Shown in pieces: positions 35,598 through 60,372 of a stretch of DNA of 64,000 bases. The DNA comes from Phallusia mammillata (lineage: Eukaryota). A program made the position numbers and the translations under genes. Below the pieces are notes generated by a model. That model saw nothing but the letters and a program-made list of their open reading frames with translations. It was not told the origin of the DNA and ran no database searches. The DNA lies in assembly GCA_965637545.1 (NCBI GenBank), contig OZ281494.1, forward strand, positions 13,392,001 through 13,456,000. The letters are read 5' to 3'. Positions within the stretch are counted from its first letter, which is position 1. Every line of letters starts with the position of its first letter.

Positions 35598-36032
35598 CAC
35601 TGAATGCGACTAGTACAGTGCACGATAAACAAAGGAAAAAAAGGAAAAAATAGTAGAACGCAAGCACGTAACAACGCAACGAAAACACCGCCCGATAACA
35701 AATGATTGACCCTCTAATCTTTAAGCAGGTGCCTGTAGCACGCTGGAAGCATCACGTCTGTTTTGATGTTCATTGTGTTGACCCGTTGGTGAATATTCCA
35801 TGACTCAAGAAATAGTCTTTTCCTGTAGTCAGGCTCCCGGGCCACAACAGAAGCCGCATTGAAATCAATACGGTGGCCTTGTGATACCGCGTGATTGGAC
35901 AGGGCCGACTTCTTTGCGTCGCTGTTGGCAACATCCCGCCGATGTTCTTTTCGGCGGGTGTTGAGTGACCTTCCTGTCTCCCCGATATATATTAACGGAC
36001 AATCGGCGCAGGGAATAGAATATACAACACCA

Positions 36033-36314
36033 CGTTGTTCAAGGGTGTCGATTGGATCTTTCGGGTGACTCAGTAGCTTGCGGAGAGTATTGGCAGGTTG
36101 AACGCCAACCGCTACGCCGAAGTCACGCAACATACGCCGTAGAATATCCGTCAATTTCGGTATGTTTTGTGACACTTCCGTACATACCGAAATTGACGGA
36201 TATTCTACGGCGTATGTTGCGTGACTTCGGTGTAGCGGTTGGCGTTCAACCTGCCAATACTCTCCGCAAGCTACTGAGTCACCCGAAAGATCCAATCGAC
36301 ACCCTTGAACAACG
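36033..36314. repeat. Fold-back inverted repeat: 133-bp arms (36033-36165, 36182-36314) with a 16-nt spacer
   Basis: Arms are reverse complements with one mismatch noticed, which explains the mirrored ORFs 35714..36295(-) and 36052..36366(+). Confidence 0.92.
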
Positions 36315-37760: not shown

Positions 37761-39988
37761 TTTAACGCGCCTTTTCAGTTCGGTCTAGACCTGCAGTTAA
37801 CAGTTGTTGCAAAGTTTATTCACAGTATAAAATCGGGCATATAAAAGTCGACGGGTAAAACACCTCTGCCCGTCATCACCACCAACCACGACTACCACGT
37901 GGATTCCCTGCCACGTCGAGTATCGCCACTTACAGAAAGCACACTGGGGGCGCCACAGAGCACATGTGACGTAATAATTATGTAACACACTCCCCCTACC
38001 ACATAAAATAGAGTGTCCACACTCAATACGACATACCACGAAAACGCATATGACAGCACAGAACGTACGACGTTACGCCACCAGTTTTTACACCAAATCG
38101 CTCTTAAACAAATTAAAGCAATAACTGCATGCGGGCACAAAATAAATAAACATACGACGTGATAAGTGCTTGTGGAACGCATTATTAATTAAATTAAGGC
38201 CCAGAATCAAATACAAGGAACTGGAGTCAGTGAACAATCGTGAAAACATTGTTGTGCAAATAAAAAACACAATAAACTAGCAGTAAATTAACAACAAAAC
38301 ACAGGAAAAACAGTTAAACAAAAACAAGACACAACGCAAAGATTCTATAAGTCTGATTTGAATGACAACAAAAAAAGTGAAATTAAGTGAAACAAAACAC
38401 AAAAACATAACAAACGAATCTATTAGGTCACGGCGGCGGAGTAAAATGGTCTATGATGAACAATACTCGGTGGTCGTATATTAACGCGCTCCACAAACTG
38501 TGGAATATGTTTTCGTGGTGCAAAGTTTGCACCCAGTGATAGAAAACCGTCGGCATTCTTGTTTGCCTCTTCCCATAGATCGTCGGCTTTCTCGTGGACA
38601 CTTTGTTGACAAAATTCACCCCATTTCGGTTCAGGGTTCTTCAAAAGCACAGCACATGTTTTTCTCAACCCTCTCTTAACATGCACACTAGGGACAAAAT
38701 TAGACGTACCCGTGCACCCGTTCCTTTGTGCAAGATATGGAGCTTCGGTAAAGCGATTGCGAGAAACTTTAGCAACATTTACACAACGCGGTAACACTTC
38801 AAGGTTGCCGCCAGAGTTTCCAACTTTTTCTCGTTTGTGGCCGCCTTTGACTGAAGCAACCATGCTTGCGGAACAAATCCTGTCCTTATTGACAACGACT
38901 CGGGTACCTGCGGCACACCCGCCTCTTCTAGTGCGTTCCAATTTTCGTTGGACAGAACATACAGCCGTGCTCTGCAGAGGTGTAGTTGGTTCAGGGTTAT
39001 ATACGTCCCCACAATTTGCTCGATTGTGGCCCTTTTTTCCACAGTGAAGGCACAAGGGTTTGTTATTCTGACAGTTCTTGTCGAAACCAACCTTATCTTT
39101 CAAGTCTTGAAGTTCGTGACGCAGTTCTTCAATCATTTCAAGCAGCACAGCTTGGTTTAAGAAAGATTGGTTGGCTGACATCGCACATATGCCCATATTA
39201 GCTGGACTTTCTGCAAAACACTCCGATTGCAAAACAATTTTACAAGCAGATGAAAAAGAAGGGCTCTCCAGACAAGAGTTTTCCCTTATTATTTTATCGG
39301 CTAAAAAACGATTTTTTAAACCGTTGGTCAGCACCAAAAAACACATTTCATTTCTCAGATTATCGTCATCCGGATATGACCCAACCGGAAAAGCTCCATA
39401 ATAAACATTCTGTCTGTTTCTTCCACTTTCTGGGTCCTTGCTACCAGGTCTTGTTTGGCCTTGTTCCTGAACACATTGCCGCCGGTCACTTTAATTCCAA
39501 GTGCCTTCAGGTCTTTGTAATCAGCCATGTACAAGTCACTGCCGCTTGCTTGCTTCATGTCAAAAATCACATCTTCCGGCAAGCTTGCTAAAAGCGCGTG
39601 GCGCTTGGCCGCTTCGTTAGCATCCACGCTTTGGCAAAAGCTTTCAAAACTTGCCAGAAAATGTACAAAGTTGCCCCCTTTGTCAAAGCGCGGTGGTGGA
39701 TAGTAAAAAGTCATACTGACGGATTAAAATGTTTAAAAAAAGGCATAAAAAATCTTCTCCCTGCAACAACTGAAGCAGGTCCTGGCGTGCTCGCCAATTT
39801 TGTAACGCGCCTTTTCAGTTCGGTCTAGACCTGCAGTTAACGGTTGTTGCAAAGTTTATTCACAGTATAAAATCGGGCATATAAAAGTCGACGGGTAAAA
39901 CACCTCTGCCCGTCATCACCACCAACCACGACTACCACGTGGATTCCCTGCCACGTCGAGTATCGCCACTTACAGAAAGCACACTGGG
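37761..39988 (-). mobile_element. Non-autonomous gag-only LTR retroelement (Ty3/Gypsy-like)
   Basis: Direct repeats 37761-37948 and 39801-39988 (two mismatches seen). 5' LTR ends ...GCGTTACA followed by PBS-like TGGCGAGCACGCCAGGAC (39796-39779). PPT GGTAGGGGGAG (38000-37990) precedes TG at 37989. No pol sequence. Confidence 0.85.
38423..39714 (-). pseudogene. Gag-like ORF split by one frameshift near 39370
   Basis: Capsid-like FLASFESFC...KRHALLASL...LVARTQKVEET..FIMELFRLG, then the zinc knuckle CLHCGKKGHNRANC (CX2CX4HX4C). No protease D(S/T)G seen. Confidence 0.8.
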
Positions 39989-44550: not shown

Positions 44551-47500
44551 TTAGTTGACGGTGTGCTGCTGGGAACTTGATGTATTGTAGCGTGCTGTGC
44601 GATTCCTTTGGTGATGTTGAGTGGTTTGTGATTGCAACGACACCGTATAAGTACCATGACTGGCAACTGGAAGACGCAACGTACTTTGCACACGAGGTAG
44701 CCACGATTCCCTTACGTCACCTTTTCTCACGCACGTCAAAATAAAAATACTGCAACCCTATATGATAAAGATGGCTATTTTCTAGCAACTTAAGCTATTT
44801 TCTAGCCGCACAAAATATATAAGATTACATAGTAACTTATATAATCTTATGTATTTTGTGCTGCTAAAGTAGGGATTTTCAACCAAAACTACTGATCTAT
44901 TAAATTATTACTTACCTGTTTAACTTAAAATGCTAGCACAAAATCATATGACAAGCTTCGTTTAAACTTAAAAAGGAGTTGAATTGAACGTGAATTCTTT
45001 ATAATACAACAAGGGGTGACAGTTAAATTCGACTCCACATAAATCTCTGCACATAAAATAAAAATGCATATACCTGTAAAGAAGCGGCAATGGAAAATAT
45101 CCAACTCATGACCTCTAGAAAACCCGGACTGTCAGAAATCATCATAAAATATGCAATAAACCAAATCAAGCCAAGAGTTGTGCTGGTTGAAAGCGCAATA
45201 GCCAGGTGGTTTGTTGACGGTTTTGACCGAGGAACGGCATTCTAAGGGATCAGATAAATGCATGGTTACAAATTTGCAAACTTCTAAGAGTTACAATAGG
45301 CACTGTTTTTATCCATTGATTCAAAACGAAACAAACAATTAGACACCCGTTTGTGTGTCATCCTCAAGTGACTGTCAATGCCATTATTGACTTACCCTCA
45401 TGTTACGGCTGCGTCGGACAAGTGACGTTATAACCATGATGAAAACGATGACGTTGAAGACAAGAAAAACTCCGACAGGAAGCAAAAATGCAAAATACAG
45501 AGAAAAGTCTTTGATCCAACATGTGTTTTCAGCCAGATAAGAGGTAGGAAAGGCAGCTGGTGGATCTGTAAAAATGCCAAAATAATAGGAATAAAAGGTT
45601 TTGTGCGTGTTTTTCAGACATCTTAGTTCCAAAAGTAGTAAACGAGCTACCTTGACCGCACATAGGAGGTACATCTGGCATAGGTGCAGTGGCGGCAATG
45701 ACGATGACGTTCGTTGTCACTACAGCCAATGGAAATCCATAGGAAAACACAATTACTTTTGGCATATAATGCCCACCAGTGAAGTGAAACACCTATGCAT
45801 AATATTCTGACTTGAGTTACGAAGAGCTGTTGGCAACAGACGGTGTAAACCAGATTAGGCTTGTAACATTAAACACGCTCCAACATAAGCAAATAAACAT
45901 TCAATGAAAACTGTTACTATGATATTTTTACAGATAACTTACTGACAATAAATATGCAGATGCCCTTTTAGACATTTCTCCCCGCTATTAGCCGTTCAAC
46001 GTAGTCAAAACATTAGCTAACAAGATTTTGTGTAGTAATATATTTTGAACGTTTTTATTAATTCATCTTGTCCAAGTCATTTTACATATAAGTGGAATAT
46101 TAATATAATTGGTATTGACTCGAAAGTCATAAAATGTTCCCCCAGTGTTGCTTACTTGTATAATAGAGCGATAAAGATAGTGCGCATACACCGACATCCA
46201 GCACCAAGCAACCAACAGAAAGTAATGCAACAAGATGGCGCTAGTGACACAGGCTGCATCGTTCGGTCGGTTGTCTATCCCGAGTACAAAGATCAAGTAC
46301 ACGATAATCAGTGTAGCTGAAAGATGCATTAACATCTGCATGGGGCGTCGTCGTCTGATTTCCCTGCATAAATAAACATATAATGTTTGCGGTAAAGTTC
46401 ATTTGCAGTTTAGTTTGCTAGTTCAAACTTACCCAAAAGGTGTACTTATTTTATGAGAACTTTTTCTTACCTCGAAGATAGCAGAACAATGATGGTCATT
46501 AGCAAGCATAGGATTGACAGAGAAGAGCCAACGTAGGTTACTATTTGTAATGAGATTTGGGCCTGGACGCTGTGGATGTTCTGCAAAACGCGTAAGGTCA
46601 GCTAACACAAAATCTATGTTCAGATCACTTGCACCAATTAATGCCTTCTCAAACACAAATGACAGGTCACACTTTGCAATAACCCACCACAAGTAACGCA
46701 AAGTTGGTAAGGTGGTCGCACTCGCAACGTGGAGGGTTTGAATTGGGAACTAAACAACATCCGGATGTTGACCAAGAATCAGTGGTAAAATTCCAAAACA
46801 CGCAGCTTTGATTCACGAACTCTGCCTGAAACACAAATTCCGAAAAGTAGCAAAATAAACATTTACAAAAAAGAAAATGTATCACTCCACTCCACACATC
46901 AATAGGAACACGTATGTAACAAACCCCCGTGAATCGCCATAAACAAATACCTGAAGCGTTTCATCATTTTGATGCATCCCAGCTTCCGTTTCTTCACTGA
47001 ATGAAATTTCAACAGGTTGCTGAAGATTAGTTATCTGTCCGTCACCTCTTACGGCGGCAGAAATTACCTGCGTATATAATTTAATACCTGTATATATTCA
47101 CTTTTTCATGTCGTATCAGTTTCCAGGTTTAACGCATGTTAGAACCCAGCCAGGAACAACCACCGTCTTCAACTCGCACTCTTTGCATTGCAGTAAGTTG
47201 GAAACTTATTTGTTGTGTCTCATGAGCGTAAATTTGCATGTCTTGAACAATTTGCATGTATGCTTGTGTAATATCAGAATGTAATAGAAACACTCAACGT
47301 TACAACTACATGCTCTAAGACTGAAGCATCTCAACAAACACACCAGTAAACTGCGCCTTGTCAACACAACTTACTCTCTACCAGACAGCTCAACTTCTCC
47401 GCAAATAAGAACATTAAGGCTTGAGGTAAATACTCTCTTTTGAAAGGCAAACATATTTTTGTTTTGCGATGCCAACACCGCGCACATTGAGTTATGGGAC

Positions 47501-50500
47501 TGTACTATCCAAAAGGAGCAAATATTCGAATACTTTACTTCACTGAATTGATATTGTTACTCACAACATTGGGAGTTTCAGGAGATGGAAAAAGGTTGTC
47601 CCTGCGGTGAAGAAGAAATACTACGCGGCGGTCGTCAATGTTTCTGCGCGCCAAACGGTTGCTTGTGTTTGAAGGCACCAGTAGCTCCTCTGGAAGCCGA
47701 ATGGATGCCAATACTTCCAGAGTACCATTGTCATTAACAATCTCCGGACTAAAACTGGCCGCGCCGGGGTCTTCCACACTAACCACCTGGTAATTAGATA
47801 AAGAATTTATGGGTATATTTCCAAATAAACACGTCAATTTTTGAAACAATCAGGGCAACGGAATCCCAACCAATCGTGCTAAGGGTAGAACACAGCAGTA
47901 AAAAGTATGTGAACTTCGAAAAAAATTAAAACTGTCATATTAAGCCTGACCATTTCATTTTACCTACAGAACATGCATATCGTGAATTATGTGTATTTTA
48001 TTATTAAAGGACGTTGATTATGAGCTGCAACCATTGTAGGTTGGGAACTATAACATCTAACACACATTAACAACGCTTACAGATTCTTGTTCCTTGTTAA
48101 ACATCAAACTACTTTTAGATTCTGTTTGCTTATTGCACGCTTACTTTTGCTTCGATGTTCGGAGTTGAAGTAATAATCGACGTTTGATTGGGCGCCAAAT
48201 CGATCTGATAAGCCAGGCTTGTCAACGACTGCACCAATCCGGATCGGTTTACCATCAAATTTTCGTCGTTCACTGATTGGTTGAAAAAGTTTGTCACGTG
48301 GTCAGCGATAGCGATCACGTTTTCATAGGATGTGGTCGTTACCTGCACAAAAAATGACAAATCCAATACTTAAATAGTTCATATTTGTTTTGATTTGGTG
48401 CATAATACGGTAGTACAAAGTGCTTTGGTTAAGTCAGTGGTCACCAAACTATAGCCGGCGAGGTCATTTTATCTGGCCTGCGAGAGTATTTGGTCCTAAT
48501 AGATATCTTGGAAAAACAAAAGCTTGAGTTAAAGGTTAAAACATAATTTGATGTAAAAGTATTTCTGCAACAACATGTAGGATTAAGTTTACTTAGTTTG
48601 ATCCAAACGTAGTTTGTTACAAAACGGACCATACTAAAACAATCAATGCCTTTATTATTGTGCCCGAACAAATCTCTTGTTAATTGTGATGAAAATAAAT
48701 GAATTTAGCCTGTAGAAGAGATTCGATAATTTTCAACACAATTTTACCATTTTACAGTAGCACGATCTGACTCTACAAACGATTGCACTCTTGTTGGTCT
48801 TGGAAAACGCGCGTCAGGGTTTGTACCCTATGTGGCCCTCGCAAGATTGTTAATGTTATCCGGCCCGCAATAAAAAAAGTTTGGCGACCCCTGGGTTAAG
48901 TGAAAACAAACTTGGCAGCTTGGCATATATAAAAAAAAACTATTTTAAAAGAAACTACAAAAGTTGTTCATATATCTGTAAATTCTTATAACTTTACCAA
49001 TAATTGATAACAGTGCGTTTCAGTACAAACTCGTTTTGCACATGCATTTTTTCCGTAAAGTTTTTACAGTTAACTCTTATGTACCTCAACGTTGCTGGCA
49101 TTATTTGCCACGTCAACAAGGAAATTTATTGTTGAGCCCACTTCTGTCGTTGTTAGTGCAACCGGATTTGACGTTTGGATGTCTAACTGAACTAAAACTT
49201 CCTGCAGCGTGGAAGCAGTAATGGTTGACACTTCGGTCTGTAAAAAAGAACGTTGTGGCCACAAGTTTTAAACTATAACAAATGTCACCGATCTAAAGAT
49301 CAGATACATTTATAGATATTTAATTTAAGAAAAGTTAGGAGTTGATATGTAAGTTATTGTACATTATGGAGAATCTACAGTATTTGCAGTTGATTAAACC
49401 AACAAAATGGCACGTACTGATTCCACTATAGTTGAGATTGTATTCTGAGTACATTGAACTTCAATAAGGCTCGATGGGAGAAAAAAGGCAAACGATAAAC
49501 CCGATATAACGGTCTCTTGGCATCGTACCGACGCATCTGATTGGTCTGAATAAAATGAAGAATCTTTTTTAGCTTTTTCAGCATAGTTTACGTTTATTGT
49601 TCAACACGTATGTAATAGAGTATCACAAATACATTGCGTTGCTTCTTACTTGTAAACTGGCAAAGTTCGTTTGAATATTGAACAAAACCAGCAAAGACCC
49701 TTGGAAAGTTGAATGTGATTCCGCTGGGAGCTGTGACCGACGAAACATCGCAACTTGCTAAAAATGTTTAAAAGTTGTTTTTACTTTATTACGCTTAAAA
49801 TTTTGTAATTTTACTCCTAAAAAGGAAGCTGAATATCGTAGCTAAGCAAAAATGCCAAGCTACTATTTCGAATGAATTATACTGCAGTAAAACCGACCAG
49901 ATGCTATAAGGGATGCATTAGAAGCTATGCTTTAAAAAGGAACCAATGACTAACCAACGCAATCGCTAGTCTCGCAAGCGCAACGCTCTTCAACTTGTGT
50001 AAGATTTACAAAACCTCCTCCTTCGATTGTAGGGAATCCTCTAGAGTCGACCTGAACAAGCTGTCGTTGGCCGTTTATTGTCGCCAGCAAGTGACATGTA
50101 GAACTTCCCGAACAGTTTCGCAAGCAATAACCTAACCCGAAAATAAGTTCAGTTGTAAAATAAAAATATTGATAATTACGCTGGCAGTTTAGGTAAGGAT
50201 TGAATAGGCAATGAGCGCAAACTACCCGTATTTCGTCAATAATTATTATATTATCAACACATTGGCTCATTTAAAAAACAGAAATGACGTTGCAGGATAG
50301 CGGATCTTTCAACAAAAATATTCATAAAATCTTACTTTCAGTAGAAATTGGTTCGGAAAATTCGGTTAACGATGAAACTACACCGTTGTTGTTTGTACGA
50401 TACGCCACTTGGAAGGATCGACCGGACGGCAAAGGGCCGTTGCAGATGCGAGTTGTGTCGTCGCGATCGCAAGTTTGATCCTGACCTAAAAAAAACTTGG

Positions 50501-53500
50501 TTGTTTTGTAAAGCTGAAAAATATAATTTTTTAAAAATTTTTGACATTAATTACCAACAACAAAGCGACCGTCACCGGTAAGGGCCCTCCTTCGTCGTTG
50601 TGAGCTCGCACACGTCACTGATCCGGTGACGTAGGCCGGTATTGGAACCAAATCGGCTGACGTTGCCCAAACACCGATTGCCGACCCTATATTTTGCAAT
50701 GTTATGTTAAGTTAAATATACGTTCAATCATTTTAGCCAAAATGTTACCAGTAGTAACAGATCCAGCCTCTCTGATTACGATTTCAACAGTTGGATTGGT
50801 ATTTCCATTAAGTGCAAAAAGAGTTTGTACTGAACCACAAGGACTTTGCACCGCAACAGCGTTGGTTCTTGAGGCACCGTTAAAGCTTTGGCTAACTACC
50901 ACGTTTGGTTGAACGCCAGGTACCGGAGAAGGCACTAAAATTATAAGTGAAGAAAGTGTGGTCTAATAAAAAAACTAATATATAGGTTTAAAATACCTGG
51001 TAAAATTGTCTGTGGCACTGTAGAAGACATAGTTGAAACAAAGCTGCTTGATGTCTGCGGTGTTGTTTCCACCGGCGTGTCAATACTTGATGAAGAAGAT
51101 GTGGCACTTGTTGGCATTCGCTCAGTGGATTCTATTGAAGTAGATTGTGCGGGTAATGTGTCAGTTGTGACATCACTGGCCGTAGATACATCAATTAATG
51201 TAACAGCTGTGGATATCATAATTGAAGAAACTGTAATAACATCAGTAGACGCTAAAAGAACGGCAGTGGTGTTCATTTGTCCATCTGTGTTGCTACTCGT
51301 TGTTGCTGCAGTTGAAGAAATTGTTGTAGAAAAAGGGGTTGATGTTGTTGATAAAGTGGTTTCAGAAACAGTCGGATTGGCTGTTACAGCAGCGGCAGTT
51401 GATGAAGAAATTCTTGTCGTGGGCTCAACTGTATTATTTAAAGTTACGACTAAATCTGTTGTTGTTTCTGTTGTAACAACATTTGTAGATGTCGCTGGTG
51501 TTGTTGCATCTCCAAAGCTTGTATTTAAATTTCCTGCAAATTCTGTAGAGGCTGCCGTTACAAAGCCAGAAGTTGGCGATGCAAATGTTGTTACAGCTTC
51601 ATTGGTTGCTGCAATTTCAGTGCTTATATCAGTTGCTGAACGATTTGTGGGTGATACAAATGTTACGTCCAATACAGTTGTGTTTAAAATTGCTTGAAAG
51701 CTCGAAGTTGTTTCTGTAGCGGCGTCGGTTGTGGTTGATGCAGACATTATACCTGAAACAGTTGTGTTAAAACTTTCTGTAAATTCTACAGTTGTTTCGA
51801 TTGCAGCATCGGTTGTGGTTGATGCAGATGTAGACATTGTATCTTCTACAATTGTGTTAAAACTTTCTGTAAATTCTGTTGTTGTTTCCATTGCAGCATC
51901 GGTTGTGGTTGATGCAGATGTAGATATTACTTCTGCTACAGTTGTGTTGAAACTTTCTGTAAATTCTGTTGTTATTTCCATTGCAGAATCGGTTGTGGTT
52001 GATACAGATGTAGATGTTACTTCTGCTACAGTCGTGTTAAAACTTTCTGTAACATCCGTAGTTGCTTCAATTGCAGAATGGGATGTGGTTGATACAGATG
52101 TAGATATTACTTCTGCTACAGTTGTGTTGAAACTTTCTGTAAATTCTGTTGTTATTTCTATTGCAGAATCAGTTGTGGTTGATGCAGATGAAGCATCTTC
52201 TACTGTTGTGTTGAAACTTTCTGTAACATCTGTAGTTGTTTCTGTTGTAGCATCGGTTGTGGTTGATGCAGATGAAGCATCTGCTACAGTTGTGTTGAAA
52301 CTTTTTGTAACATCTGTAGTTGTTTCCATTGCAGAATCAGTTGTGGTTAATGCAGATGTAGATGTAACTTCTGATACAGTTGCGTTGAAACTTTCTGTAA
52401 CATCTGCAGTTGTTTCCATTAGAGCATCGGTTGTGTTTGATTCAGATGTAGATGTAACTTCTGATACAGTTGTGTTGAAACTTTCTGTAACATCTGTAGT
52501 TGTTTCCATTGCCGAATCGGTTGTGGTTGATGCAGATGAAGATGTAACTTCTGATGCACTTGTGTTGAAACTTTCTGTAACATCTGCAGTTGTTTCCATT
52601 AGAGCATCGGTTGTGTTTGATTCAGATGTAGATGTAACTTCTGATACAGTTGTGTTGAAACTTTCTGTAACATCTGTAGTTGTTTCCATTGCCGAATCGG
52701 TTGTGGTTGATGCAGATGAAGATGTAACTTCTGATGCACTTGTGTTGAAACTTTCTGTAACATCTGTAGTTGTTTCCATTGCAGAATCGGTTGTGGTTGA
52801 TGCAGATGTAGATATTACTTCTGCTACAGTCGTGTTGAAACTTCCTGTAACATCTGCAGTTGTTTCTATTGGAGCATCGGTTGTGGTTGATGCAGATGTA
52901 GATATTAATTCTGCTACAGTTGCGTTGAAACTTTCTGTAACATCTGTAGTTGTTTCTGTTGCAGCATCGGTTGCGGTTGATGCAGATGTAGCATCTGCTA
53001 CAGTTGTGTTGAAACTTTCTGTAATATCTGTAGTTGTTTCTGTTGCAGCATCGGTTGTGGTTGGTGCAGATGTAAATGCTGCATCTTCTACAGTTGTGTT
53101 GAAACTTTCTGTAACATCAGCAGGTGTTTCTATTGCGGCATCGGTTGTGGTTGATGCAGAGGTACTTGTTAATTCTGCTTCAGTTCTGTTGAAACTTTTT
53201 GTAAATTCTGTAGTTGTTCCTATTGCAGCATCGGTTGTGGTTGAAGCAGATGTAGATGTTACTTCTGCTACAGTCGTGTTAAAACTTTCTGTAACACCAG
53301 TAGTTGTTTCTATTGTCGTATTATTGTTGAATAGAGATTCTTCTGTACTGACATTTGTATTTGATTCCGTTGTTGTTGGTTCTGTCGTCAACGTTATATT
53401 TAAATCAGTATTGTTGGTCGATAGTGATTCTTCTGTGTTAACATTTGTAGTTGATTCCGTTTTTGCTGGTTCTGTCGTCACAGTTATATTTAAATCAGTA

Positions 53501-56500
53501 CTGTTGTTGAATAATGATTCTTCTGTGTTAACATTTGTAGTTGATTCCGTTGTTGCTGGTTCTGTCATAACAGTTATATTTACATCAGTATTATTGTTGG
53601 ATAATGATTCGTCTGTACTGATACTTGTAGTTGATTCCATTGTTGTTGGTTCTGTCGTCAAAATTATGTTTACAACAGTATTATTGTCAAATAATGGTTC
53701 TTCTGTACTGACATTTGTAGTTGATTCCGTTGTTGCTGGTTCTGTCGTCACAGTTGTATTTGTAACAGTATCATTGTTAAATAATGGTTCGTCTGTGCTT
53801 ACTATTGTGGTTGAATTAGTTGTTGCTGGTTCGGCCGTTGCAGTTATATTTGCATCAGTATTGTTGTTAAATAATGATTCTTCTGTGTTAACATTTGTAG
53901 TTGATTCCGTTGTTGTTGGTTCTGGTTCTGTCGTCACAGTTATATTTACATCAGTATTGTTGTTTGATACTGATTCTTCTGTGTTAACATTTGTAGTTGA
54001 TTCCGTTGTTGTTGGTTCTGGTTCTGTCGTCACAGTTATATTTACATCAGTATTGTTGTTTGATACTGATTCTTCTGTGTTAACATTTGTAGTTGATTCC
54101 GTTGTTGCTGGTTCTGTCGTCACAGTTGTATTTGTAACAGTATCATTGTTAAATAATGATTCTTCTGTGGTAACATTTGTAGTTGATTCCGTTGTTGTTG
54201 GTTCTGTCGTCACAGTTATATTTACATCAGTATTGTTGTTGAATAATGATTCTTCTGTGTCAACATTTGTAGTTGATTCCGTTGTTGGTGGTTCTGTCGT
54301 CACAGTTATATTTACATCAGTATTGTTGTTGAATAATGATTCTTCTGTGTCAACATTTGTAGTTGATTCCGTTGTTGGTGGTTCTGTCGTCACAGTTATA
54401 TTTACATCAGTATTGTTGTTGAATAATGATTCTTCTGTGTTAATATTTGTAGTTGATTCGATTGTTGCTGGTTCTGTCGTCACAGTTGTATTTACATCAG
54501 TATTGTTGTTGGATAATGGTTCTTCTGTGTTCACATTAGTAGTTGATTCCGTGGTTGTTGGTTCTGTCGTCACAGTTGTATTTACATCAGTATTGTTGTT
54601 TGATAATGGTTCGTCTGTGCTGACTATTGTGGTTGAATTAGTTGTTGCTGGTTCTGTCGTCACAGTTGTATTTACATCAGTATTGTTGTTTGATAATGGT
54701 TCGTCTGTGCTGACTATTGTGGTTGAATTAGTTGTTGCTGGTTCGGCCGTTGCAGTTATATTTGCATCAGTATTGTTGTTGAATACTGATTCTTCTGTGT
54801 TAACATTTGTAGTTGATTCCGTTGTTGCTGGTTCTGTCGTCACAGTTATATTTACATCAGTATTGTTGTTGAATAATGATTCTTCTGTGTTAACATTTGT
54901 AGTTGATTCCGTTGTTGTTGGTTCTGGTTCTGTCGTCACAGTTATATTTACATCAGTATTGTTGTTGAATAATGATTCTTCTGTGTTAACATTTGTAGTT
55001 GATTCCGTTGTTGTTGGTTCTGGTTCTGTCGTCACAGTTATATTTACATCAGTATCATTATTAAATAATGATTCTTCTGTACTAACATTTGTAGTTGATT
55101 CCGTTGTTGTCGGTTCTGTCGTCACAGTTATATTTACATCAGTGTTGTTGTTGAATAATGATTCTTCTGTGTTAACATTTGTAGTTGATTCCGTTGTTGC
55201 TGGTTCTGTCGTCACAGTTATATTTACATCAGTATTGTTGGTCGATAGTGACTCTTCTGTGTTAACAGTTGTAGTTGATTCCGTTGTTGTTGGTTCTGTC
55301 GTCACAGTTATATTTACATCAGTATTGTTGTTGAATAATGATTCTTCTGTGTTAACATGTGTGGTTGATTCCGTTGTTGCTGGTTCTGTCGTCACAGTTA
55401 TATTTACATCAGTATTGTTGGTGGATAGTGATTCTTCTGTGTTAACAGTTGTAGTTGATTCCGTTGTTGCTGGTTTTGTCGTCACAGTTGTATTTACAAC
55501 AGTATTGTTGTTGAATAATGATTCTTCTGTGCTATCATTTGTAGTCAATTCCGTTGTTGCTGGTTTTGTCGTCACAGTTGTATTTACAACAGTATCATTG
55601 TTAAATAATGATTCTGCTGTGTTAACATTTGTGTTTGATTCCGTTGCTGCTGGTTCTGTCGTCACAGTTGTATTTACATCAGTATCATTGTTAAATAATG
55701 ATTCTTCTGTGTCAACATTTGTAGTTGATTCCGTTGTTGGTGGTTCTGTCGTCACAGTTATATTTACATCAGTATTGTTGTTGAATAATGATTCTTCTGT
55801 GTCAACATTTGTAGTTGATTCCGTTGTTGGTGGTTCTGTCGTCACAGTTATATTTACATCAGTATTGTTGTTGAATAATGATTCTTCTGTGTTAATATTT
55901 GTAGTTGATTCGATTGTTGCTGGTTCTGTCGTCACAGTTGTATTTACATCAGTATTGTTGTTGGATAATGGTTCTTCTGTGTTCACATTAGTAGTTGATT
56001 CCGTGGTTGTTGGTTCTGTCGTCACAGTTGTATTTACATCAGTATTGTTGTTTGATAATGGTTCGTCTGTGCTGACTATTGTGGTTGAATTAGTTGTTGC
56101 TGGTTCTGTCGTCACAGTTGTATTTACATCAGTATTGTTGTTTGATAATGGTTCGTCTGTGCTGACTATTGTGGTTGAATTAGTTGTTGCTGGTTCGGCC
56201 GTTGCAGTTATATTTGCATCAGTATTGTTGTTGAATACTGATTCTTCTGTGTTAACATTTGTAGTTGATTCCGTTGTTGCTGGTTCTGTCGTCACAGTTA
56301 TATTTACATCAGTATTGTTGTTGAATAATGATTCTTCTGTGTTAACATTTGTAGTTGATTCCGTTGTTGTTGGTTCTGGTTCTGTCGTCACAGTTATATT
56401 TACATCAGTATTGTTGTTGAATAATGATTCTTCTGTGTTAACATTTGTAGTTGATTCCGTTGTTGTTGGTTCTGGTTCTGTCGTCACAGTTATATTTACA

Positions 56501-59500
56501 TCAGTATCATTATTAAATAATGATTCTTCTGTACTAACATTTGTAGTTGATTCCGTTGTTGTCGGTTCTGTCGTCACAGTTATATTTACATCAGTGTTGT
56601 TGTTGAATAATGATTCTTCTGTGTTAACATTTGTAGTTGATTCCGTTGTTGCTGGTTCTGTCGTCACAGTTATATTTACATCAGTATTGTTGGTCGATAG
56701 TGACTCTTCTGTGTTAACAGTTGTAGTTGATTCCGTTGTTGTTGGTTCTGTCGTCACAGTTATATTTACATCAGTATTGTTGTTGAATAATGATTCTTCT
56801 GTGTTAACATGTGTGGTTGATTCCGTTGTTGCTGGTTCTGTCGTCACAGTTATATTTACATCAGTATTGTTGGTGGATAGTGATTCTTCTGTGTTAACAG
56901 TTGTAGTTGATTCCGTTGTTGCTGGTTTTGTCGTCACAGTTGTATTTACAACAGTATTGTTGTTGAATAATGATTCTTCTGTGCTATCATTTGTAGTCAA
57001 TTCCGTTGTTGCTGGTTTTGTCGTCACAGTTGTATTTACAACAGTATCATTGTTAAATAATGATTCTGCTGTGTTAACATTTGTGTTTGATTCCGTTGCT
57101 GCTGGTTCTGTCGTCACAGTTGTATTTACATCAGTATCATTGTTAAATAATGATTCTTCTGTGTTAACATTTGTAGTTGATTCCGTTGTTGCTGGTTCTG
57201 TCGTCACAGTTATATTTACATCAGTATTGTTGTTGGATAATGATTCTGCTGTACTTATATTTGTAGTTAAATTAGTTGTTGCTGGTTCTGTCGTCACAGT
57301 TGTATTTAACATAGTGTCATTTGTGAATGATAGATCCTCTGTACTGACATTTGTAGTTGACTGCATTGTTGCTGGTACTGTCGTTACAGTTATATTTACA
57401 TCAGTATTGTTGTTTGATAATGATTTGTCTGTGCTGGCATTTGTGGTTGAATTAGTTGTTTCTGGTTCTGTCGTCACAGTTACAATTACATCGGTATCAT
57501 TGTTGAATAATAGTTCCTCTGTACTGACATCTGTGGTTGAATTTGTTGTTGCTGGTTCTGTCGTCACAGTTATAATTACATCGGTGTTGTTGTTGGGAAA
57601 TGATTCTTCTGTGCTGATATTTGTGGCATGTTCTACTGTTGTTGAAGTTGAATCATCGTTATCTGTTCTCGGCAAGACTGCTGGTTGATTAGTGGTCTCT
57701 GCATGGCAATAAGATTGTTTTTCAAAAAATATCTAAATAAAATTTCTTGTGTCACTTTTTACCAGTTGTATATGTGATGTTGAATCCTTCTAATGGTTGA
57801 TCTGATGACGAACGGAAGCTAATAAAAAGGGAGTTAACCGACGAAACGTTGACAATGGTTGGATTGCCAACAGAAACAGTTATATTTTGATCCAAGTTGT
57901 CGATATTATTTGATGCTGTTCGTTCTCCAGTGTGCAGAGAAAGTGCGATTGCCCTGCGAGTGGAACTTTGTCACCATTTGAAAACTAAACCATATTTTTA
58001 CCTATGCGTTTTATTATTAGAAACTGGGTGGCATAAATTTGTAACCAAAGCTATAAGCAATGTAGTATGAATAGAAAGCAGTGAAAAAAGTCAAGGAATC
58101 ACTGATAAGGGAAACTTACGTGACAACAGAGAAGAGGTTAGTGTTGATGGTTGTGACAGTTCTGCCTATTGTCACAAAGTCATTAAAGTTGATCTGGATG
58201 ACCTCAAATGTGAAGTGAATTGCTGCAAAACGCCTTTGATTTAGTTCCTGAGTTTTTTTCTTGAAGAAACGGAACAAAGCAACGATTGATTAATTACCAT
58301 ATAATTAGTTTAGTGATATTAAGTCTTTAATCTACTTTGTACTGTAGCGTATAGTAAATTTCATAAGAGTGTTTAACTTATTCAGAATCTCCTGTTGGCC
58401 TACAACTTCAAAATTTTTCATTTTAATCTATTTTGTAACTGATGAAGCAAACAAAATGTATGGACCTAAAACTGTATTGAGGTAATTTAAACAAGAGTTG
58501 CGAAACTCCATTTACTTTTATTTGCTGCAAATTTTAGACGAGCAAAAATTAAATCACAAAAAGCACAAGAAACTTTTTCACAGAGTAACATGAGTAACCA
58601 CGATTAAAAAATCTCCCACGTTTCAAGCCGCTTAGAAATCGCATTCAGTGAAGTCACCTCTGTTTAGTTTAACGGATCTAATAAGTGTGTTAAACCCAGT
58701 CTACAGCACGTATCCAAAATCAAAAATGTGTGACACATTATATCATGTAAATAATTTAAGTTTAAAATTATTGGTAATCAAACCAGAGTTGCAAACACTG
58801 GAGCCCGAAACCCGACCTGAACCCGAATGTTTTTAAAAATCCTGTTCAGGCCCGAAAGTTCGATTGACAGACTTATACATTGAAGCCTCAGGAAAGACCA
58901 AGACAACAAACACAATGGACACTTGTTCTTGAACATAGCGTTTCCTAAGACTGTTTGACATCAGGTAAGGTCCAGCAACTGGCTACGTAGCTAGTTAAAT
59001 ATTTAATAAAAAAATATCGTCACAGAGTGTAAAAAAATACCGAATACCGAACCTGGCATGAACCCGAACCCGGCCTGACCTCCAACTCTGAATTAAACTA
59101 TTATGGTACCACAAAAACAATCAATCGCCGGCAAATTTTTGCCCTTAACATACCTGAAATGGACAGCGATTGATCAAAACTCCATAGGCGGTATCCATCG
59201 GGAATGTTGCCAGGATAAACGTCAGGATAACAAGGCGACAAGATTGTTCCAGTGGGCGCGGAGAGAATTATTACTTCAGGAGTGATTTCATTCGAATTTA
59301 CGCAAGTATGCTGATCTGCACAAAACACACACAGGACTGACTTCATTTTTACAAACAATGTGGGGCTGTTGTAAGCTTTTCGGTGCAAAACATATTTGTA
59401 GCAGAAAGTTATCAACGTGGTATAATTGTTTTGCGACTGTAATTTGGGGCCGATGTACCACTTGTGGTGGGGTTTTCGTTTGTTTCGGACCACGAATCAG

Positions 59501-60372
59501 GTTTCAATGGTAGTTTCTTATCCGTCGTTTTGGAAACAATAGTAGGTTAGCGAAAAGGAAAATTTGTGCACGGCAGTGCCTTTCTCATTCAGTTAACACG
59601 TTTTCTCATTACTGATGGCATTTGTCTGACCTGTAAAGAACGCACACGTTTACAGTGCAAAGTAAAGTGTTGCCGTATTTCAAGCCTTATTTTAAAAACG
59701 TAGATTCTAAATCCTCTAATTCTAAAAATAACATAAGGTATTTTCAGAGCGCTTACTAAAACTATCAAAAAGTTTGGGCCCTTACTAAGTTCAGAGTGGT
59801 TGTTTTTATGCCATATATGTACCATCTTTGTCAACCATGAATATTACACCCAGTTCTTGTCGAGTTTGATATGATTGCGTATTTACGATATGAGCTGAGT
59901 TATGGTTTCTGTCAAGGTTTGCGAGAACGTTACGGCCAACCACAGCCAAAGTCATAATGCCGTAACTGGAAGCTTGGTAAACTGTCGTACTGAAGCGATA
60001 AGAACGAAAAAATCATTTGCTTTGATTTCATAATCTGAGAAGTCTAATATAACCTACGCGGACGCTAAACATGGCGATAAAAAGTTTTAATTTTCTTAAA
60101 ACACTTTTCCTGCCATGTCCTTCTTCTATACACTTTCACACCTGTCGACATTTATTGAGTTTTAAATATTTTATCACGCTATGATGCTTGTCCTTTGTAC
60201 ACTTTTAATGTAACGTATGGTTACAATAAACAGAAACACAATAGGGCCCCTAGACAACATAGTACTTACCAACAAACGTGTAGGCTTGTCCGAAGTCAGG
60301 ATCGGCAATGAATTGGGAGATAGCGCACTGACAAAGGCTAGACAGGTAGAGCAATAACAAAACGGATTTCAT
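44551..60372 (-). CDS. Adhesion GPCR (ADGRG-like), ~3278 aa: signal peptide, CUB, mucin stalk, FN3-like module, Cys-rich/HormR-like region, GAIN/GPS, 7TM
   Basis: 21 phase-compatible exons: 60372-60270, 59315-59154, 58222-58120, 57953-57763, 57698-50997, 50934-50749, 50485-50336, 50131-49955, 49757-49650, 49545-49418, 49237-49085, 48342-48145, 47786-47565, 47067-46951, 46825-46688, 46580-46471, 46363-46156, 45792-45657, 45565-45396, 45241-45074, 44757-44551 (9837 nt). GPS CVFWNF...WSTSGC...CECDHLTNFALL; family-2 TM motifs LLHYFLLVAWCWM, CWI, FLLPVG..LVFN, LGLIW, SLQG. Confidence 0.88.
48435..48893. mobile_element. hAT MITE in a GPCR intron
   Basis: CAGTGGTCACCAAAC...GTTTGGCGACCCCTG, perfect TSD GGTTAAGT (48427-48434, 48894-48901). 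Confidence 0.9.
51650..57610 (-). repeat. Coding tandem repeats: ~47 x 90-bp unit (EESLFNNNTDVNITVTTEPATTESTTNVNT) and ~18 x 90-bp unit (TESFNTTVAEVTSTSASTTTDSAMETTTDV)
   Basis: Visible in ORF 50941..57675. Includes a higher-order 1452-bp duplication (marker GCTATCATTTG at 55531 and 56983). Unit counts are estimates from span/90. Confidence 0.92.
58784..59090. mobile_element. hAT-type MITE with ACCCGA subterminal repeats in a GPCR intron
   Basis: TIR CAGAGTTG / CAACTCTG; TSD AATCAAAC / AATTAAAC (7/8 match). Confidence 0.78.

What the first reader, a model, noticed from the sequence alone, without database searches (positions are those of the whole stretch)
44551..60372. Giant adhesion GPCR with an unusual CUB / mucin / phosphatase-like FN3 / GAIN architecture
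The complete ~3278-aa model has a cleavable GPS (HL|T) and a Stachel-like TNFALLV. Just after the stalk, exons 50934-50749 and 50485-50336 encode ...GQDQTCDRDDTTRICNGPLPSGRSFQVAYRTNNNGVVSSLTEFSEPIST. This resembles the juxtamembrane FN3-like domain of R3 receptor phosphatases and SUSD1 (CxGPLxPxxxYxVxxR...FSxPxxT). I do not recognise that module from any vertebrate aGPCR. The CUB domain is divergent, apparently lacking the second disulfide. It may be a lineage-specific, exon-shuffled mechanosensor or surface-barrier receptor (inference).
Basis: partly seen in the sequence, partly recalled or inferred. Interest (0 to 1): 0.72.

Follow-up and report, generated by a model that had tools for sequence, protein, structure and literature searches.

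The report
Giant mucin adhesion GPCR, phosphatase-type domain
This is an intact-looking sea-squirt-type adhesion receptor gene with a CUB tip, a 2,233-residue sugar-coated stalk and, before its self-cleaving GAIN domain, a furin-cleavable domain of the kind that normally sits next to the membrane in receptor tyrosine phosphatases; this domain combination appears to be undescribed, and expression is unproven.

Summary
The gene is real at the sequence level. I built a minus-strand model of 22 GT-AG exons (60372-44551), 3,324 codons, with no internal stop. It encodes a signal peptide, a divergent two-cysteine CUB, one 6.7-kb mucin exon, a three-exon module, a Cys-rich stretch, GAIN/GPS (CDHL|TNFALLV) and an ADGRG-like 7TM.

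It lies inside the "FN3-like" module and carries an invariant R-[KR]-[KR]-R furin-type site.

The module (exons A-B-C, all phase 1) occurs 12 times in this genome. All copies are on the same chromosome, and where a downstream gene body was identified it is a paralogous adhesion GPCR.

A profile of exon C searched against 1.8 billion proteins found related exons on marine eukaryote contigs. One is the exon just before the TM and phosphatase exons of an FN3-type receptor phosphatase gene (E 5e-5; hhalign E 5e-11). Pfam PTP_tm is the only family hit, and always below its cut-off. A language-model search points to Fn3_PTPRU and PTP_tm.

SUSD1, the fold, expression and function remain untested. No RNA run held the gene.

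I rate it a new variant of a known kind, of moderate interest. Earlier notes of this scan report another outer module shared between GPCRs and phosphatases elsewhere in this genome.

The parts
60270..60372 (-). Exon 1: ATG and signal peptide (MKSVLLLLYLSSLCQCAISQ...), ends in phase 1
   Evidence: Direct reading; donor TTG|GTAAGT
59154..59315 (-). Exon 2: N-terminal third of the divergent CUB (GTILSPCYPDVYPGN)
   Evidence: PDB phmmer hits only CUB proteins, cubilin E 2e-4. Conserved at 48% identity in the paralogue at C1:11265589
58120..58222 (-). Exon 3: middle of the CUB (IHFTFEVIQINFNDFVTIG), with no Cys where CUB C3 would be
   Evidence: Phase-consistent GT-AG exon; no family hit on its own
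57763..57953 (-). Exon 4: C-terminal third of the CUB (SLFISFRSSSDQPLEGFNITY)
   Evidence: Pfam CUB E 0.09, profile positions 75-110/110; cubilin E 0.12; conserved in two paralogues
50997..57698 (-). Exon 5: mucin-like stalk of 2,233 codons; 31% Thr, 11% Ser, 12% Asn, 137 N-x-S/T sequons. It holds 90-nt repeat arrays at 51758-53315 and 53318-57624
   Evidence: Single ORF; TRF; composition. An exact 1,471-nt tandem duplicate, 54242-55712 = 55694-57164
50749..50934 (-). Exon 6 = module exon A (PNVVVSQ...SPC...VEIVIREAG), phase 1-1
   Evidence: 11 paralogous copies; weak colinear match to an RPTP exon on L058 (hhalign E 0.01)
50555..50686 (-).
   Evidence: Conserved between A and C in the other copies with AG/GT borders: 9 by the genome search, the other 2 by tblastn
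50586..50597 (-). Furin-type site RRRR inside exon B
   Evidence: R-[KR]-[KR]-R is present in 12 of 12 copies. The L058 RPTP exon has GRKKRE at the matching place
50336..50485 (-). Exon 8 = module exon C (C-x8-C-NGPL-x4-S[FY]xVAxR...T[ED]FSxP[IV]xT), phase 1-1
   Evidence: Profile A2; library hit to an RPTP juxtamembrane exon; PTP_tm in 6 of 12 paralogues; Atlas Fn3_PTPRU/PTP_tm
49418..50131 (-). Exons 9-11 (50131-49955, 49757-49650, 49545-49418): Cys-rich linker, 10 Cys, no family assigned
   Evidence: Phase-consistent GT-AG exons; no Pfam hit; only exon 10 is weakly conserved in a paralogue
46951..49237 (-). Exons 12-15 (49237-49085, 48342-48145, 47786-47565, 47067-46951): GAIN domain upstream of the GPS exon
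   Evidence: Conserved in 5 paralogues directly upstream of their GPS exons; no Pfam hit by exon; assignment by position
46688..46825 (-). Exon 16: GPS motif. The cleavage triad HL|T is at 46714-46706 and the Stachel TNFALLV at 46708-46688
   Evidence: Pfam GPS E 6e-14; PDB ADGRF1/L3/G3 GAIN
44551..46580 (-). Exons 17-22 (46580-46471, 46363-46156, 45792-45651, 45565-45396, 45241-45074, 44757-44551): seven hydrophobic helices, cytoplasmic tail and stop
   Evidence: 7tm_2 by exon; best PDB hits are ADGRG6, G2 and G4 (E 1e-10); exon chain checked

Best explanation
What it is (shown at the sequence level): an intact, 22-exon adhesion GPCR gene of a lineage-specific paralogue family. The genome is said by earlier notes to be that of the ascidian Phallusia mammillata.

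The product, in order:
- a signal peptide;
- a divergent two-cysteine CUB;
- a stalk of about 2,230 residues, rich in Thr, Ser and Asn, that is probably heavily glycosylated;
- a module of about 155 residues encoded by three phase-1 exons;
- a Cys-rich linker;
- GAIN with a canonical HL|T site and a TNFALLV tethered agonist;
- an ADGRG-like seven-helix domain.

The module is a relative of the long, membrane-proximal FN3-like domain of receptor tyrosine phosphatases (Pfam PTP_tm / Fn3_PTPRU type). It was moved by exon shuffling in front of a GAIN domain. It carries an invariant furin-type site in the loop between its middle and last parts.

How it probably works (inference from how ADGRG6, R2B phosphatases and other adhesion GPCRs work):
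- The receptor is cut twice in the secretory pathway, by a furin-like convertase in the module and by autoproteolysis in GAIN.
- It reaches the surface as three non-covalently held pieces.
- The CUB tip binds a partner and the long stalk transmits pull or shear.
- Force either sheds the CUB-mucin piece at the cleaved module or removes the whole N-terminal fragment at GAIN.
- Removal at GAIN exposes TNFALLV, which activates the 7TM.
For: Gene model: 22 GT-AG exons with consistent phases, 9,975 nt, no internal stop.

Domains:
- GPS E 6e-14 and 7tm_2 by exon.
- The 7TM is closest to ADGRG6/G2/G4.
- CUB.
- Stalk repeats and composition.

The module is a real unit: 12 A-B-C copies with conserved splice phases, 4 invariant Cys and an invariant R-[KR]-[KR]-R.

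Link to phosphatases:
- Profile A2 hits P0017 at E 5e-5 over its whole length.
- P0017 lies on L058 between FN3 exons and the TM and Y_phosphatase exons.
- hhalign gives 97%, E 5e-11.
- That exon matches PTP_tm at E 5e-4.
- PTP_tm is the only Pfam family for the paralogue exons.
- The Atlas gives Fn3_PTPRU/PTP_tm.
- This genome's own R2B-type exon matches PTPRM FN4 structures 2V5Y and 8A16 at E 1e-11/2e-12 and aligns to A2 at E 1e-4.
- That R2B-type domain is also split into three exons at similar profile positions.

CUB and mucin belong to the same gene:
- The mucin exon ends and exon A starts in phase 1, 62 nt apart.
- Exon A's frame has no ATG between the upstream stop and the acceptor.
- The paralogue at C1:11.27 Mb has the same order, CUB...short mucin-A-B-C-GAIN-7TM.

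Precedents for furin-cleaved but associated ectodomains: PTPRK (PMC12067748) and GPR126 (PMC6954182).
Against: - No RNA: the RNA-labelled runs of this species held none of the gene's words, and only an intron repeat was laid.
- All PTP_tm hits are below Pfam's cut-off (at most 14.6 of 26.3 bits). The window's own exon C gives no Pfam hit.
- Exons A and B match the phosphatase exons only weakly (E 0.01, 0.034), and exon A has no Atlas neighbour.
- The fold was not predicted, because the joined module has no reference.
- Three exon peptides given as separate chains did not reach the mark in complex prediction. That is no verdict.
- In phosphatases the domain abuts the membrane; here it does not.
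- Furin cleavage, glycosylation, ligand and G-protein coupling are all untested.
- The stalk length may be off by 484 residues if the exact 1,471-nt duplicate is an assembly artefact.
Confidence: 0.6

Rival explanations
1. The A-B-C module is a SEA-type (ferredoxin-like alpha/beta) domain. On this view it is the counterpart of the furin-cleaved SEA domain between the N-terminal domains and GAIN in ADGRG6/GPR126, and its likeness to phosphatase FN3 domains is confined to a short strand motif.
For: - The position and logic are the same as in GPR126: an N-terminal CUB, a domain with an (R/K)-X-K-R site upstream of GAIN, and a 7TM closest to ADGRG6.
- GPR126's SEA was itself invisible to sequence methods and was found only by structure (PMC6954182).
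- Exons A and B lack significant FN3 or PTP matches.
- Membrane mucins typically pair a mucin stalk with a SEA domain (my own knowledge).
Against: - No SEA hit in Pfam at E up to 10 for any exon or paralogue.
- No PDB hit to 6V55 or any other SEA chain with the three exon profiles.
- Exon C matches RPTP membrane-proximal FN3-type exons over its whole length. Its centre matches the generic FN3 E/F-strand motif in many FN3 proteins.
- There is no GSVVV-type motif.
- Exon C is rich in Gly and Pro, with no helix-like stretch where SEA has its second helix (direct reading).
Confidence: 0.12
2. The model is not one transcript, or the gene is not used. Either CUB-mucin is a separate secreted product (the mucin ORF read through its donor stops 17 codons later at 50944) and the GAIN-7TM part is a separate or dead gene, or the whole locus is an unexpressed recent duplicate.
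For: - No RNA support in the runs available.
- The genome holds at least 150 GPS exons, many in tandem arrays where broken copies are expected.
- Earlier notes of this scan report many broken copies in neighbouring receptor arrays.
- The exact 1.47-kb duplicate shows that the stalk is evolving fast or is misassembled.
Against: - All 22 exons are open with GT-AG borders and matching phases.
- Exon A's frame has no ATG between the upstream stop and the acceptor, and no signal peptide of its own.
- The same CUB-to-module order is kept in the paralogue at C1:11.27 Mb at 35-50% identity, which implies long-term constraint.
- The invariant Cys and furin site are kept across 12 copies.
Confidence: 0.1
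3. The module is a lineage-specific domain of its own, unrelated in descent to phosphatase FN3 domains. On this view the shared C-x8-C-NGPL...Y-x-V-x-x-R...FS-x-P motif is convergent or a chance similarity.
For: - Only about 45 residues carry the significant similarity.
- Pfam thresholds are never reached.
- This genome has no phosphatase gene with a close copy of exon C.
- Intron positions differ by about 5 residues from those of the phosphatase genes.
Against: - The match to the L058 exon covers the whole profile, with both Cys, NGPL, Y-x-V-x-x-R and S-x-P-I-x-T in register, at E 5e-5 against 1.8 billion proteins.
- The two preceding L058 exons carry the W...Y-x-A...C...RKKR and V-I-V-x-E motifs in the same order.
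- Two independent methods, HMMER against Pfam and language-model features, name phosphatase membrane-proximal FN3 families and nothing else.
Confidence: 0.08

Closest known systems
ADGRG6 / GPR126 (vertebrate adhesion GPCR)
   Same: - An N-terminal CUB.
- A furin-type (R/K)-X-K-R site in a folded domain upstream of GAIN, giving a potential three-piece receptor.
- A canonical HL|T GPS.
- The 7TM exon's best solved relative is ADGRG6 (E 1.4e-10; PMC6954182).
   Different: - No PTX or HormR was found. Pfam and the exon-profile PDB searches gave no SEA match, but the fold was not tested.
- The cleavable domain is a phosphatase-type FN3-like module instead of SEA.
- A 2,233-residue mucin-like exon is inserted.
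- The CUB has two cysteines instead of four.
R3 receptor tyrosine phosphatases (PTPRJ/DEP-1 type), juxtamembrane domain, Pfam PTP_tm PF18861
   Same: - The signature C-x8-C-NGPL-x4-[FY]-x-V-x-x-R...S-x-P-[IV]-x-T.
- PTP_tm is the only Pfam family hit (profile positions 79-106).
- An FN3-type RPTP gene on L058 has the same exon just before its TM exon.
   Different: - Here the domain is followed by a Cys-rich linker, GAIN and 7TM, not by a single TM and a phosphatase.
- Scores stay below the Pfam cut-off.
- Vertebrate R3 sequences themselves were not available to compare.
- Whether a furin site is a feature of vertebrate R3 enzymes was not examined; the one RPTP gene seen here, on L058, has RKKR.
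R2B receptor tyrosine phosphatases (PTPRM/K/T/U), fourth FN3 domain, Pfam Fn3_PTPRU PF23144
   Same: - A long (145-position) FN3 domain encoded by three exons.
- Basic furin-type sites in an internal loop; in PTPRK, cleavage gives E and P subunits.
- The motif F-x-[VI]-G-D...N-x-P-L-x-P-x-x-x-Y-x-[IV].
- The Atlas neighbours of the window's exon C are Fn3_PTPRU clusters.
   Different: - R2B domains have no Cys pair before the N-x-P-L motif.
- The basic sites lie one loop earlier.
- hhalign to this genome's R2B-type exon is only E 1e-4 over 23 columns.
- No Fn3_PTPRU hit by hmmscan for the module exons.
ADGRG4/GPR112, ADGRG2/HE6 and membrane mucins (MUC1 type)
   Same: - A very long Ser/Thr-rich, probably glycosylated stalk encoded by one giant exon, on a G-family 7TM (my own knowledge for GPR112/HE6).
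- The 7TM exon also hits ADGRG2 and ADGRG4.
- The mucin-plus-cleavable-domain logic of membrane mucins.
   Different: - The stalk is poor in Pro (3.7%) and rich in Asn (12%, 137 sequons), so N-glycans may matter as much as O-glycans.
- CUB replaces PTX at the tip.
- The cleavable domain is not SEA.
'Unclassified Adhesion' GPCRs of Ciona (Kamesh et al. 2008, PMC2396169)
   Same: A tunicate-specific expansion of adhesion GPCRs without vertebrate orthologues. 21 of 24 such Ciona models had only the GPS recognised, so their outer domains were unassigned.
   Different: That paper reports no CUB, mucin or phosphatase-type FN3 module. Orthology to this family was not tested.

Membership tests
Adhesion GPCR (class B2) | GPS motif with the Cys/Trp pattern and an H-L-T/S cleavage triad at the end of a GAIN domain | tested here: met
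   Pfam GPS 52.7 bits (cut-off 22.5), E 6e-14. The sequence reads SCVFWNFTTDSWSTSGCC...RCECDHL|TNFALLV. PDB GAIN chains are hit.
Adhesion GPCR (class B2) | Secretin-type seven-helix domain directly after the GPS | tested here: met
   7tm_2 by exon: 41.8 and 25.6 bits (cut-off 20.6), plus 16 bits for TM1. Seven hydrophobic segments are read in exons 17-22. 22 adhesion GPCR chains in the PDB are hit.
Adhesion GPCR (class B2) | Actual autoproteolysis and tethered-agonist signalling | not testable with these tools
   This needs protein expression and signalling assays.
ADGRG6/GPR126 orthologue | CUB-PTX-SEA-HormR-GAIN ectodomain | tested here: not met
   A CUB-like N-terminus is present. There is no PTX, SEA or HormR hit in any exon at E up to 10. 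A mucin exon and a phosphatase-type module stand in their place.
ADGRG6/GPR126 orthologue | 7TM groups with family G in a phylogeny | tested here: inconclusive
   One exon ranks G6, G2 and G4 first among solved chains. No tree was built, because the joined 7TM was not used.
CUB domain (PF00431) | Score over Pfam's gathering cut-off | tested here: not met
   The best exon gives 13.5 bits against 21.4. The domain is split over three exons, so each exon sees only a third of the profile.
CUB domain (PF00431) | N-terminal G-x-I-x-S-P-x-Y-P-x-x-Y and C-terminal F-x-S-D...G-F motifs, in order | tested here: met
   Exon 2 aligns to the starts of cubilin, MASP1, C1s and neuropilin CUBs (E 2e-4 to 0.07). 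Exon 4 aligns to CUB ends.
CUB domain (PF00431) | Four cysteines forming two disulfides | tested here: not met
   Only two Cys are present (HTC and SPC), both in exon 2 and both kept in the paralogues. There are none in exons 3-4.
RPTP membrane-proximal FN3-like domain (PTP_tm PF18861 / Fn3_PTPRU PF23144) | Score over Pfam's gathering cut-off | tested here: not met
   PTP_tm gives 12-14.6 bits against 26.3 in 6 of 12 paralogue exons, and none for the window's copy. Fn3_PTPRU gives no hit.
RPTP membrane-proximal FN3-like domain (PTP_tm PF18861 / Fn3_PTPRU PF23144) | Significant sequence link to the domain in a bona fide receptor phosphatase gene | tested here: met
   A2 against P0017/L058: E 5e-5 in the whole library, hhalign E 5e-11. 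The gene context is FN3 exons - this exon - TM exon - Y_phosphatase exons. That exon matches PTP_tm at E 5e-4.
RPTP membrane-proximal FN3-like domain (PTP_tm PF18861 / Fn3_PTPRU PF23144) | FN3-type beta-sandwich fold | not testable with these tools
   The module is split over three exons in every copy found, and a joined sequence has no reference, so it was not folded. Indirect support: this genome's R2B-type exon links A2 (E 1e-4) to solved PTPRM FN4 (E 2e-12).
RPTP membrane-proximal FN3-like domain (PTP_tm PF18861 / Fn3_PTPRU PF23144) | Lies next to the single transmembrane helix | tested here: not met
   Here it is followed by about 140 Cys-rich residues, GAIN and 7TM.
Mucin-type domain | Long tandem repeats rich in Pro, Thr and Ser | tested here: inconclusive
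   65 repeats of 30 aa with Thr 31% and Ser 11%, but Pro only 3.7% and Asn 12% with 137 sequons. Glycosylation is untested.
SEA domain | Pfam SEA match or a G|S-V-V-V autoproteolysis motif | tested here: not met
   No SEA hit for any exon or paralogue, no PDB SEA hit, and no GSVVV in the sequence. The fold itself was not tested.

The most novel reading that the evidence does not exclude
The receptor is a three-piece mechanosensor with two force-sensitive joints in series. The first joint is a furin-cleaved, phosphatase-type FN3 domain that releases the CUB-mucin 'antenna'. The second is the GAIN domain that releases the tethered agonist. The FN3-type joint would have been recruited independently of, and would work like, the furin-cleaved SEA joint of vertebrate GPR126. 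The rapidly expanding stalk (an exact 1.47-kb duplicate) would tune reach or force threshold. This would make cleaved-but-associated FN3 domains a third class of mechanical fuse beside SEA and GAIN.
Probability: 0.25. Interest if true: 0.65.

Novelty: new variant of a known kind. Interest (0 to 1): 0.45.

Why it matters
Adhesion GPCRs are thought to sense force through ectodomains assembled by exon shuffling. This gene adds a domain type that I could not find reported in the receptor class: the furin-cleavable membrane-proximal FN3 domain of receptor tyrosine phosphatases.

The domain sits where vertebrate GPR126 has its furin-cleaved SEA domain. That gives a natural test of whether a pre-cut but still associated domain upstream of GAIN is a recurrent design principle.

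The finding also assigns a family to one of the unrecognised outer parts that tunicate adhesion GPCRs may carry. In addition it shows a phosphatase-type outer domain on GPCR genes of this genome; earlier notes of this scan report another module shared between the two receptor classes.

The practical value is limited until expression and cleavage are shown.

Tried and rejected
- **Joined model.** Every search used single exons by reference. This is why the module's fold and a 7TM tree are missing.
- **Word search.** A search with the non-repetitive tail of the mucin ORF (length class 1,245-3,960 aa) gave no hit. The gene's own annotated protein is therefore not in that collection at that length.
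- **PDB profile searches.** Searches with exon profiles A1, A2 and A3 gave only chance hits at E above 0.5.
- **Multi-FN3 proteins from the large search.** None of the 11 scanned is a phosphatase. Apart from two with no FN3 (P0003, P0024), they match only the generic E/F-strand motif.
- **PF18861 in this genome.** Only an ordinary FN3 exon and a broken frame were found. The weak A2 hit at C4:29460183 is the wrong frame of a lectin-type gene.
- **RNA.** The RNA-labelled runs of the species held 0.00 of the words. Laying four of them gave only a 38-86-nt dispersed repeat in an intron at 48808-48893.
- **Complex prediction.** Exons A, B and C given as three chains scored 0.27 against a mark of 0.34. 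This is no verdict, neither for nor against.
- **ESM Atlas with exon A.** No usable hit.
- **Further genomic DNA.** The 3-kb loci from the search were used instead.
- **SUSD1.** No SUSD1 sequence was available by reference, so it was not tested.
- **Literature.** 'PTP_tm' and 'PF18861' gave no relevant paper.

Full report
**Scope and method.** The window is animal DNA with short introns. It is C1:13392001-13456000 of a 240-Mb genome that holds at least 150 GPS exons. Earlier notes of this scan call the genome the ascidian Phallusia mammillata; I did not check that. I left out every search or fold of the joined protein. That is why there is no fold of the three-exon module and no tree of the 7TM.

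**Gene model.**
- I rebuilt the model on the minus strand from open frames, GT-AG sites, phase continuity and conservation in paralogues.
- It has 22 exons from the ATG at 60372 to the stop ending at 44551. The total is 9,975 nt, or 3,324 codons plus stop. Every junction is phase-consistent and there is no internal stop.
- Introns around the module are 62-69 nt long.

**Known parts.**
- The GPS exon scores 52.7 bits (E 6e-14) and reads RCECDHL|TNFALLV.
- Three 7TM exons match 7tm_2. Seven hydrophobic segments can be read.
- The best solved relatives of the TM2-3 exon are ADGRG6, ADGRG2 and ADGRG4 (E 1e-10).
- The N-terminal domain is split over exons 2-4. Exon 2 aligns to the first strand and the YP motif of cubilin, MASP1, C1s and neuropilin CUBs (E 2e-4 to 0.07). 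Exon 4 aligns to the last strands (Pfam CUB E 0.09; cubilin E 0.12).
- The CUB has only two cysteines, HTC and SPC. Both are kept in two paralogous CUBs at C1:11.2656 and 14.2703 Mb.
- Exon 5 (57698-50997) is one 2,233-codon exon of 90-nt repeats. It is 31% Thr, 11% Ser, 12% Asn and only 3.7% Pro, with 137 N-glycosylation sequons.
- Inside exon 5, 1,471 nt are repeated exactly in tandem: 54242-55712 = 55694-57164. This is either a very recent expansion or an assembly artefact, so the stalk length is uncertain by 484 residues.

**The module.**
- Between them lies a third exon, 50686-50555 (B). It is 132 nt, phase 1-1, with AG and GT borders. It encodes SAIGVWATSADLVPIPAYVTGSVTCASSQRRRRALTGDGRFVV.
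- Searching the whole genome with each exon found 11 further copies of A and of C, and 9 of B. A tblastn of the fetched loci found the remaining two B copies. The order is always A-B-C, and all copies are on C1 at 11.27 and 14.21-14.41 Mb.
- Where the gene body was identified, the copies sit upstream of GPS and 7TM exons that are 50-75% identical to this gene's. Some loci hold several modules ahead of one GPS exon.
- Splice phases are conserved.
- The alignments show four invariant cysteines (one in A, one in B, two in C). They also show an invariant R-[KR]-[KR]-R a few residues after the Cys of exon B.
- A profile search with exon C finds only these 12 copies in the genome.

**What the module is: Pfam and the large search.**
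- By Pfam, the window's own three exons give nothing.
- Among the 12 exon-C sequences, six hit one family only, PTP_tm. That family is described as [quoted passage not shown]. The hits have E 0.04-0.25 at profile positions 79-106, well under the cut-off.
- The exon-C profile against 1.84 billion representatives gave 31 hits.
- Eight are short exon-level ORFs from marine metagenome or read-assembly contigs, and they match the whole profile. Most of the rest that I scanned (9 of 11) are multi-FN3 proteins that match only positions 17-38, the FN3 E/F-strand motif.

**What the module is: the phosphatase gene on L058.**
- One short hit, P0017 (E 5e-5), lies on a 698-kb eukaryotic contig, L058. It sits downstream of FN3 exons, about 0.9 kb upstream of a TM exon and about 2 kb upstream of the phosphatase-domain exons.
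- hhalign of the profile to that exon gives 97% probability, E 5e-11. Both Cys, NGPL, Y-x-V-x-x-R and S-x-P-I-x-T are in register.
- The exon itself hits PTP_tm at E 5e-4.
- The two exons before it carry, in the same order, V-I-V-x-E and W...Y-x-A...C...GRKKRE. These align weakly to exons A and B (E 0.01 and 0.034).

**What the module is: independent lines.**
- The ESM Atlas neighbours of the window's own exon C are Fn3_PTPRU clusters (0.92, 173 shared features) and a cluster carrying both PTP_tm and Fn3_PTPRU.
- This genome's only Fn3_PTPRU locus (C4:17.757 Mb) is an R2B-type phosphatase gene. Its last domain exon matches the solved PTPRM FN4 (2V5Y, 8A16) at E 1e-11/2e-12. The same exon also hits PTP_tm and fn3 weakly, and aligns to the exon-C profile at E 1e-4.
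- That domain is likewise spread over three exons at similar profile positions and has RRRR-type sites in an internal loop.

**Conclusion on the module.** It is a relative of the long membrane-proximal FN3-like domain of receptor phosphatases and is closest to the PTP_tm type. The FN3 fold is inferred, not shown.

**Other contexts and the family.**
- Related exons on other contigs sit next to an EGF_CA exon (L060), or in a locus with no GPS exon in the roughly 2 kb downstream before the next gene (L051). The module is therefore mobile.
- The paralogue at C1:11.27 Mb reads CUB - EGF - FN3 - short Thr-rich exon - A-B-C - GAIN - 7TM.
- The layout is thus a family trait, and the window's gene is its giant-stalk member.

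**One gene or two.**
- The mucin exon ends and exon A begins in phase 1, 62 nt apart.
- Exon A's frame opens right after a stop, with no ATG before the acceptor and no signal peptide.
- The paralogue keeps the same order.

These points argue for one transcript, but no RNA was found. The RNA-labelled runs of the species held none of the sampled words, and only an intron repeat was laid.

**Mechanism (inference).**
- A furin-type site kept in 12 of 12 copies, in a loop of a folded domain, suggests cleavage in the secretory pathway with the halves staying together.
- There are precedents. PTPRK is cut by furin into E and P subunits (PMC12067748). Human GPR126 is cut in its SEA domain upstream of GAIN (PMC6954182).
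- With GPS autoproteolysis this gives a three-piece receptor.
- Pull on the CUB tip or drag on the stalk would shed either the CUB-mucin piece or the whole N-terminal fragment. Shedding the latter would expose TNFALLV.

**Rivals.**
- SEA-like fold: 0.12.
- Not one expressed gene: 0.10.
- Unrelated lineage-specific domain: 0.08.

**Novelty.**
- The Ciona repertoire paper lists 24 unclassified adhesion GPCRs, 21 of them with only the GPS recognised (PMC2396169).
- A vertebrate survey mentions neither fibronectin nor mucin domains (PMC8584163).
- I found no report of a phosphatase-type membrane-proximal FN3 domain in an adhesion GPCR.
- Earlier notes of this scan describe another outer module shared between a GPCR and phosphatases in this genome (s1-394848).

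I rate it a new variant of a known kind, interest 0.45.

Noticed in passing
window 54242-55712 and 55694-57164: An exact 1,471-nt tandem duplicate (unit 1,452 nt, about 16 repeats of 90 nt) lies inside the mucin exon. It is either a very recent expansion or an assembly artefact.
   Followed up: partly
window 51731-57688 (+): A 1,985-aa open frame lies antisense to the mucin exon (rich in Val, Ser and Asp). I take it for a by-product of the in-frame 90-nt repeats, not a gene.
   Followed up: no
window 19623-20003, 25151-25531, 30676-31056 (+) and 22473-22886, 27998-28411, 33518-33931 (-): Three near-identical tandem units of about 5.5 kb. Each has an ORF ending in an EGF-like motif ([27 protein letters not shown]). 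They belong to another gene or array upstream of the GPCR.
   Followed up: no
window 35714-36295 (-) and 38423-39346 (-): Two ORFs that look like mobile-element remnants, judged by eye only. The second carries a C-x2-C-x4-H-x4-C (zinc-knuckle-like) motif.
   Followed up: no
window 48808-48893 (intron 12): This is the only part of the gene region matched by contigs of RNA-labelled runs. The matches are 90-95% alike and the contigs run on into unlike sequence, so it looks like a dispersed repeat.
   Followed up: partly
G000 C1:11265589-11279000 (L038, L046): A paralogue with the layout CUB - EGF - FN3 - short Thr-rich exon - A-B-C module - GAIN - 7TM. It is the same family with a roughly 60-residue stalk instead of 2,233 residues.
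   Followed up: partly
L058 7647-13692 (ENA ERZ24900295 ctg6123l): An FN3-type receptor tyrosine phosphatase gene of an unidentified eukaryote. Its juxtamembrane domain has the same C-x8-C-NGPL signature and a GRKKRE site. Whether phosphatases of this type are furin-cleaved there is untested.
   Followed up: partly
G000 C1:13458685-13458810 (-), 2.7 kb beyond the window's end: Another GPS exon (E 5e-8), so a further adhesion GPCR gene lies just upstream of this one.
   Followed up: no
window 49418-50131: Exons 9-11 encode about 140 residues with 10 cysteines between the module and GAIN. They have no family match and are barely conserved in the paralogues; HormR was not detected.
   Followed up: partly
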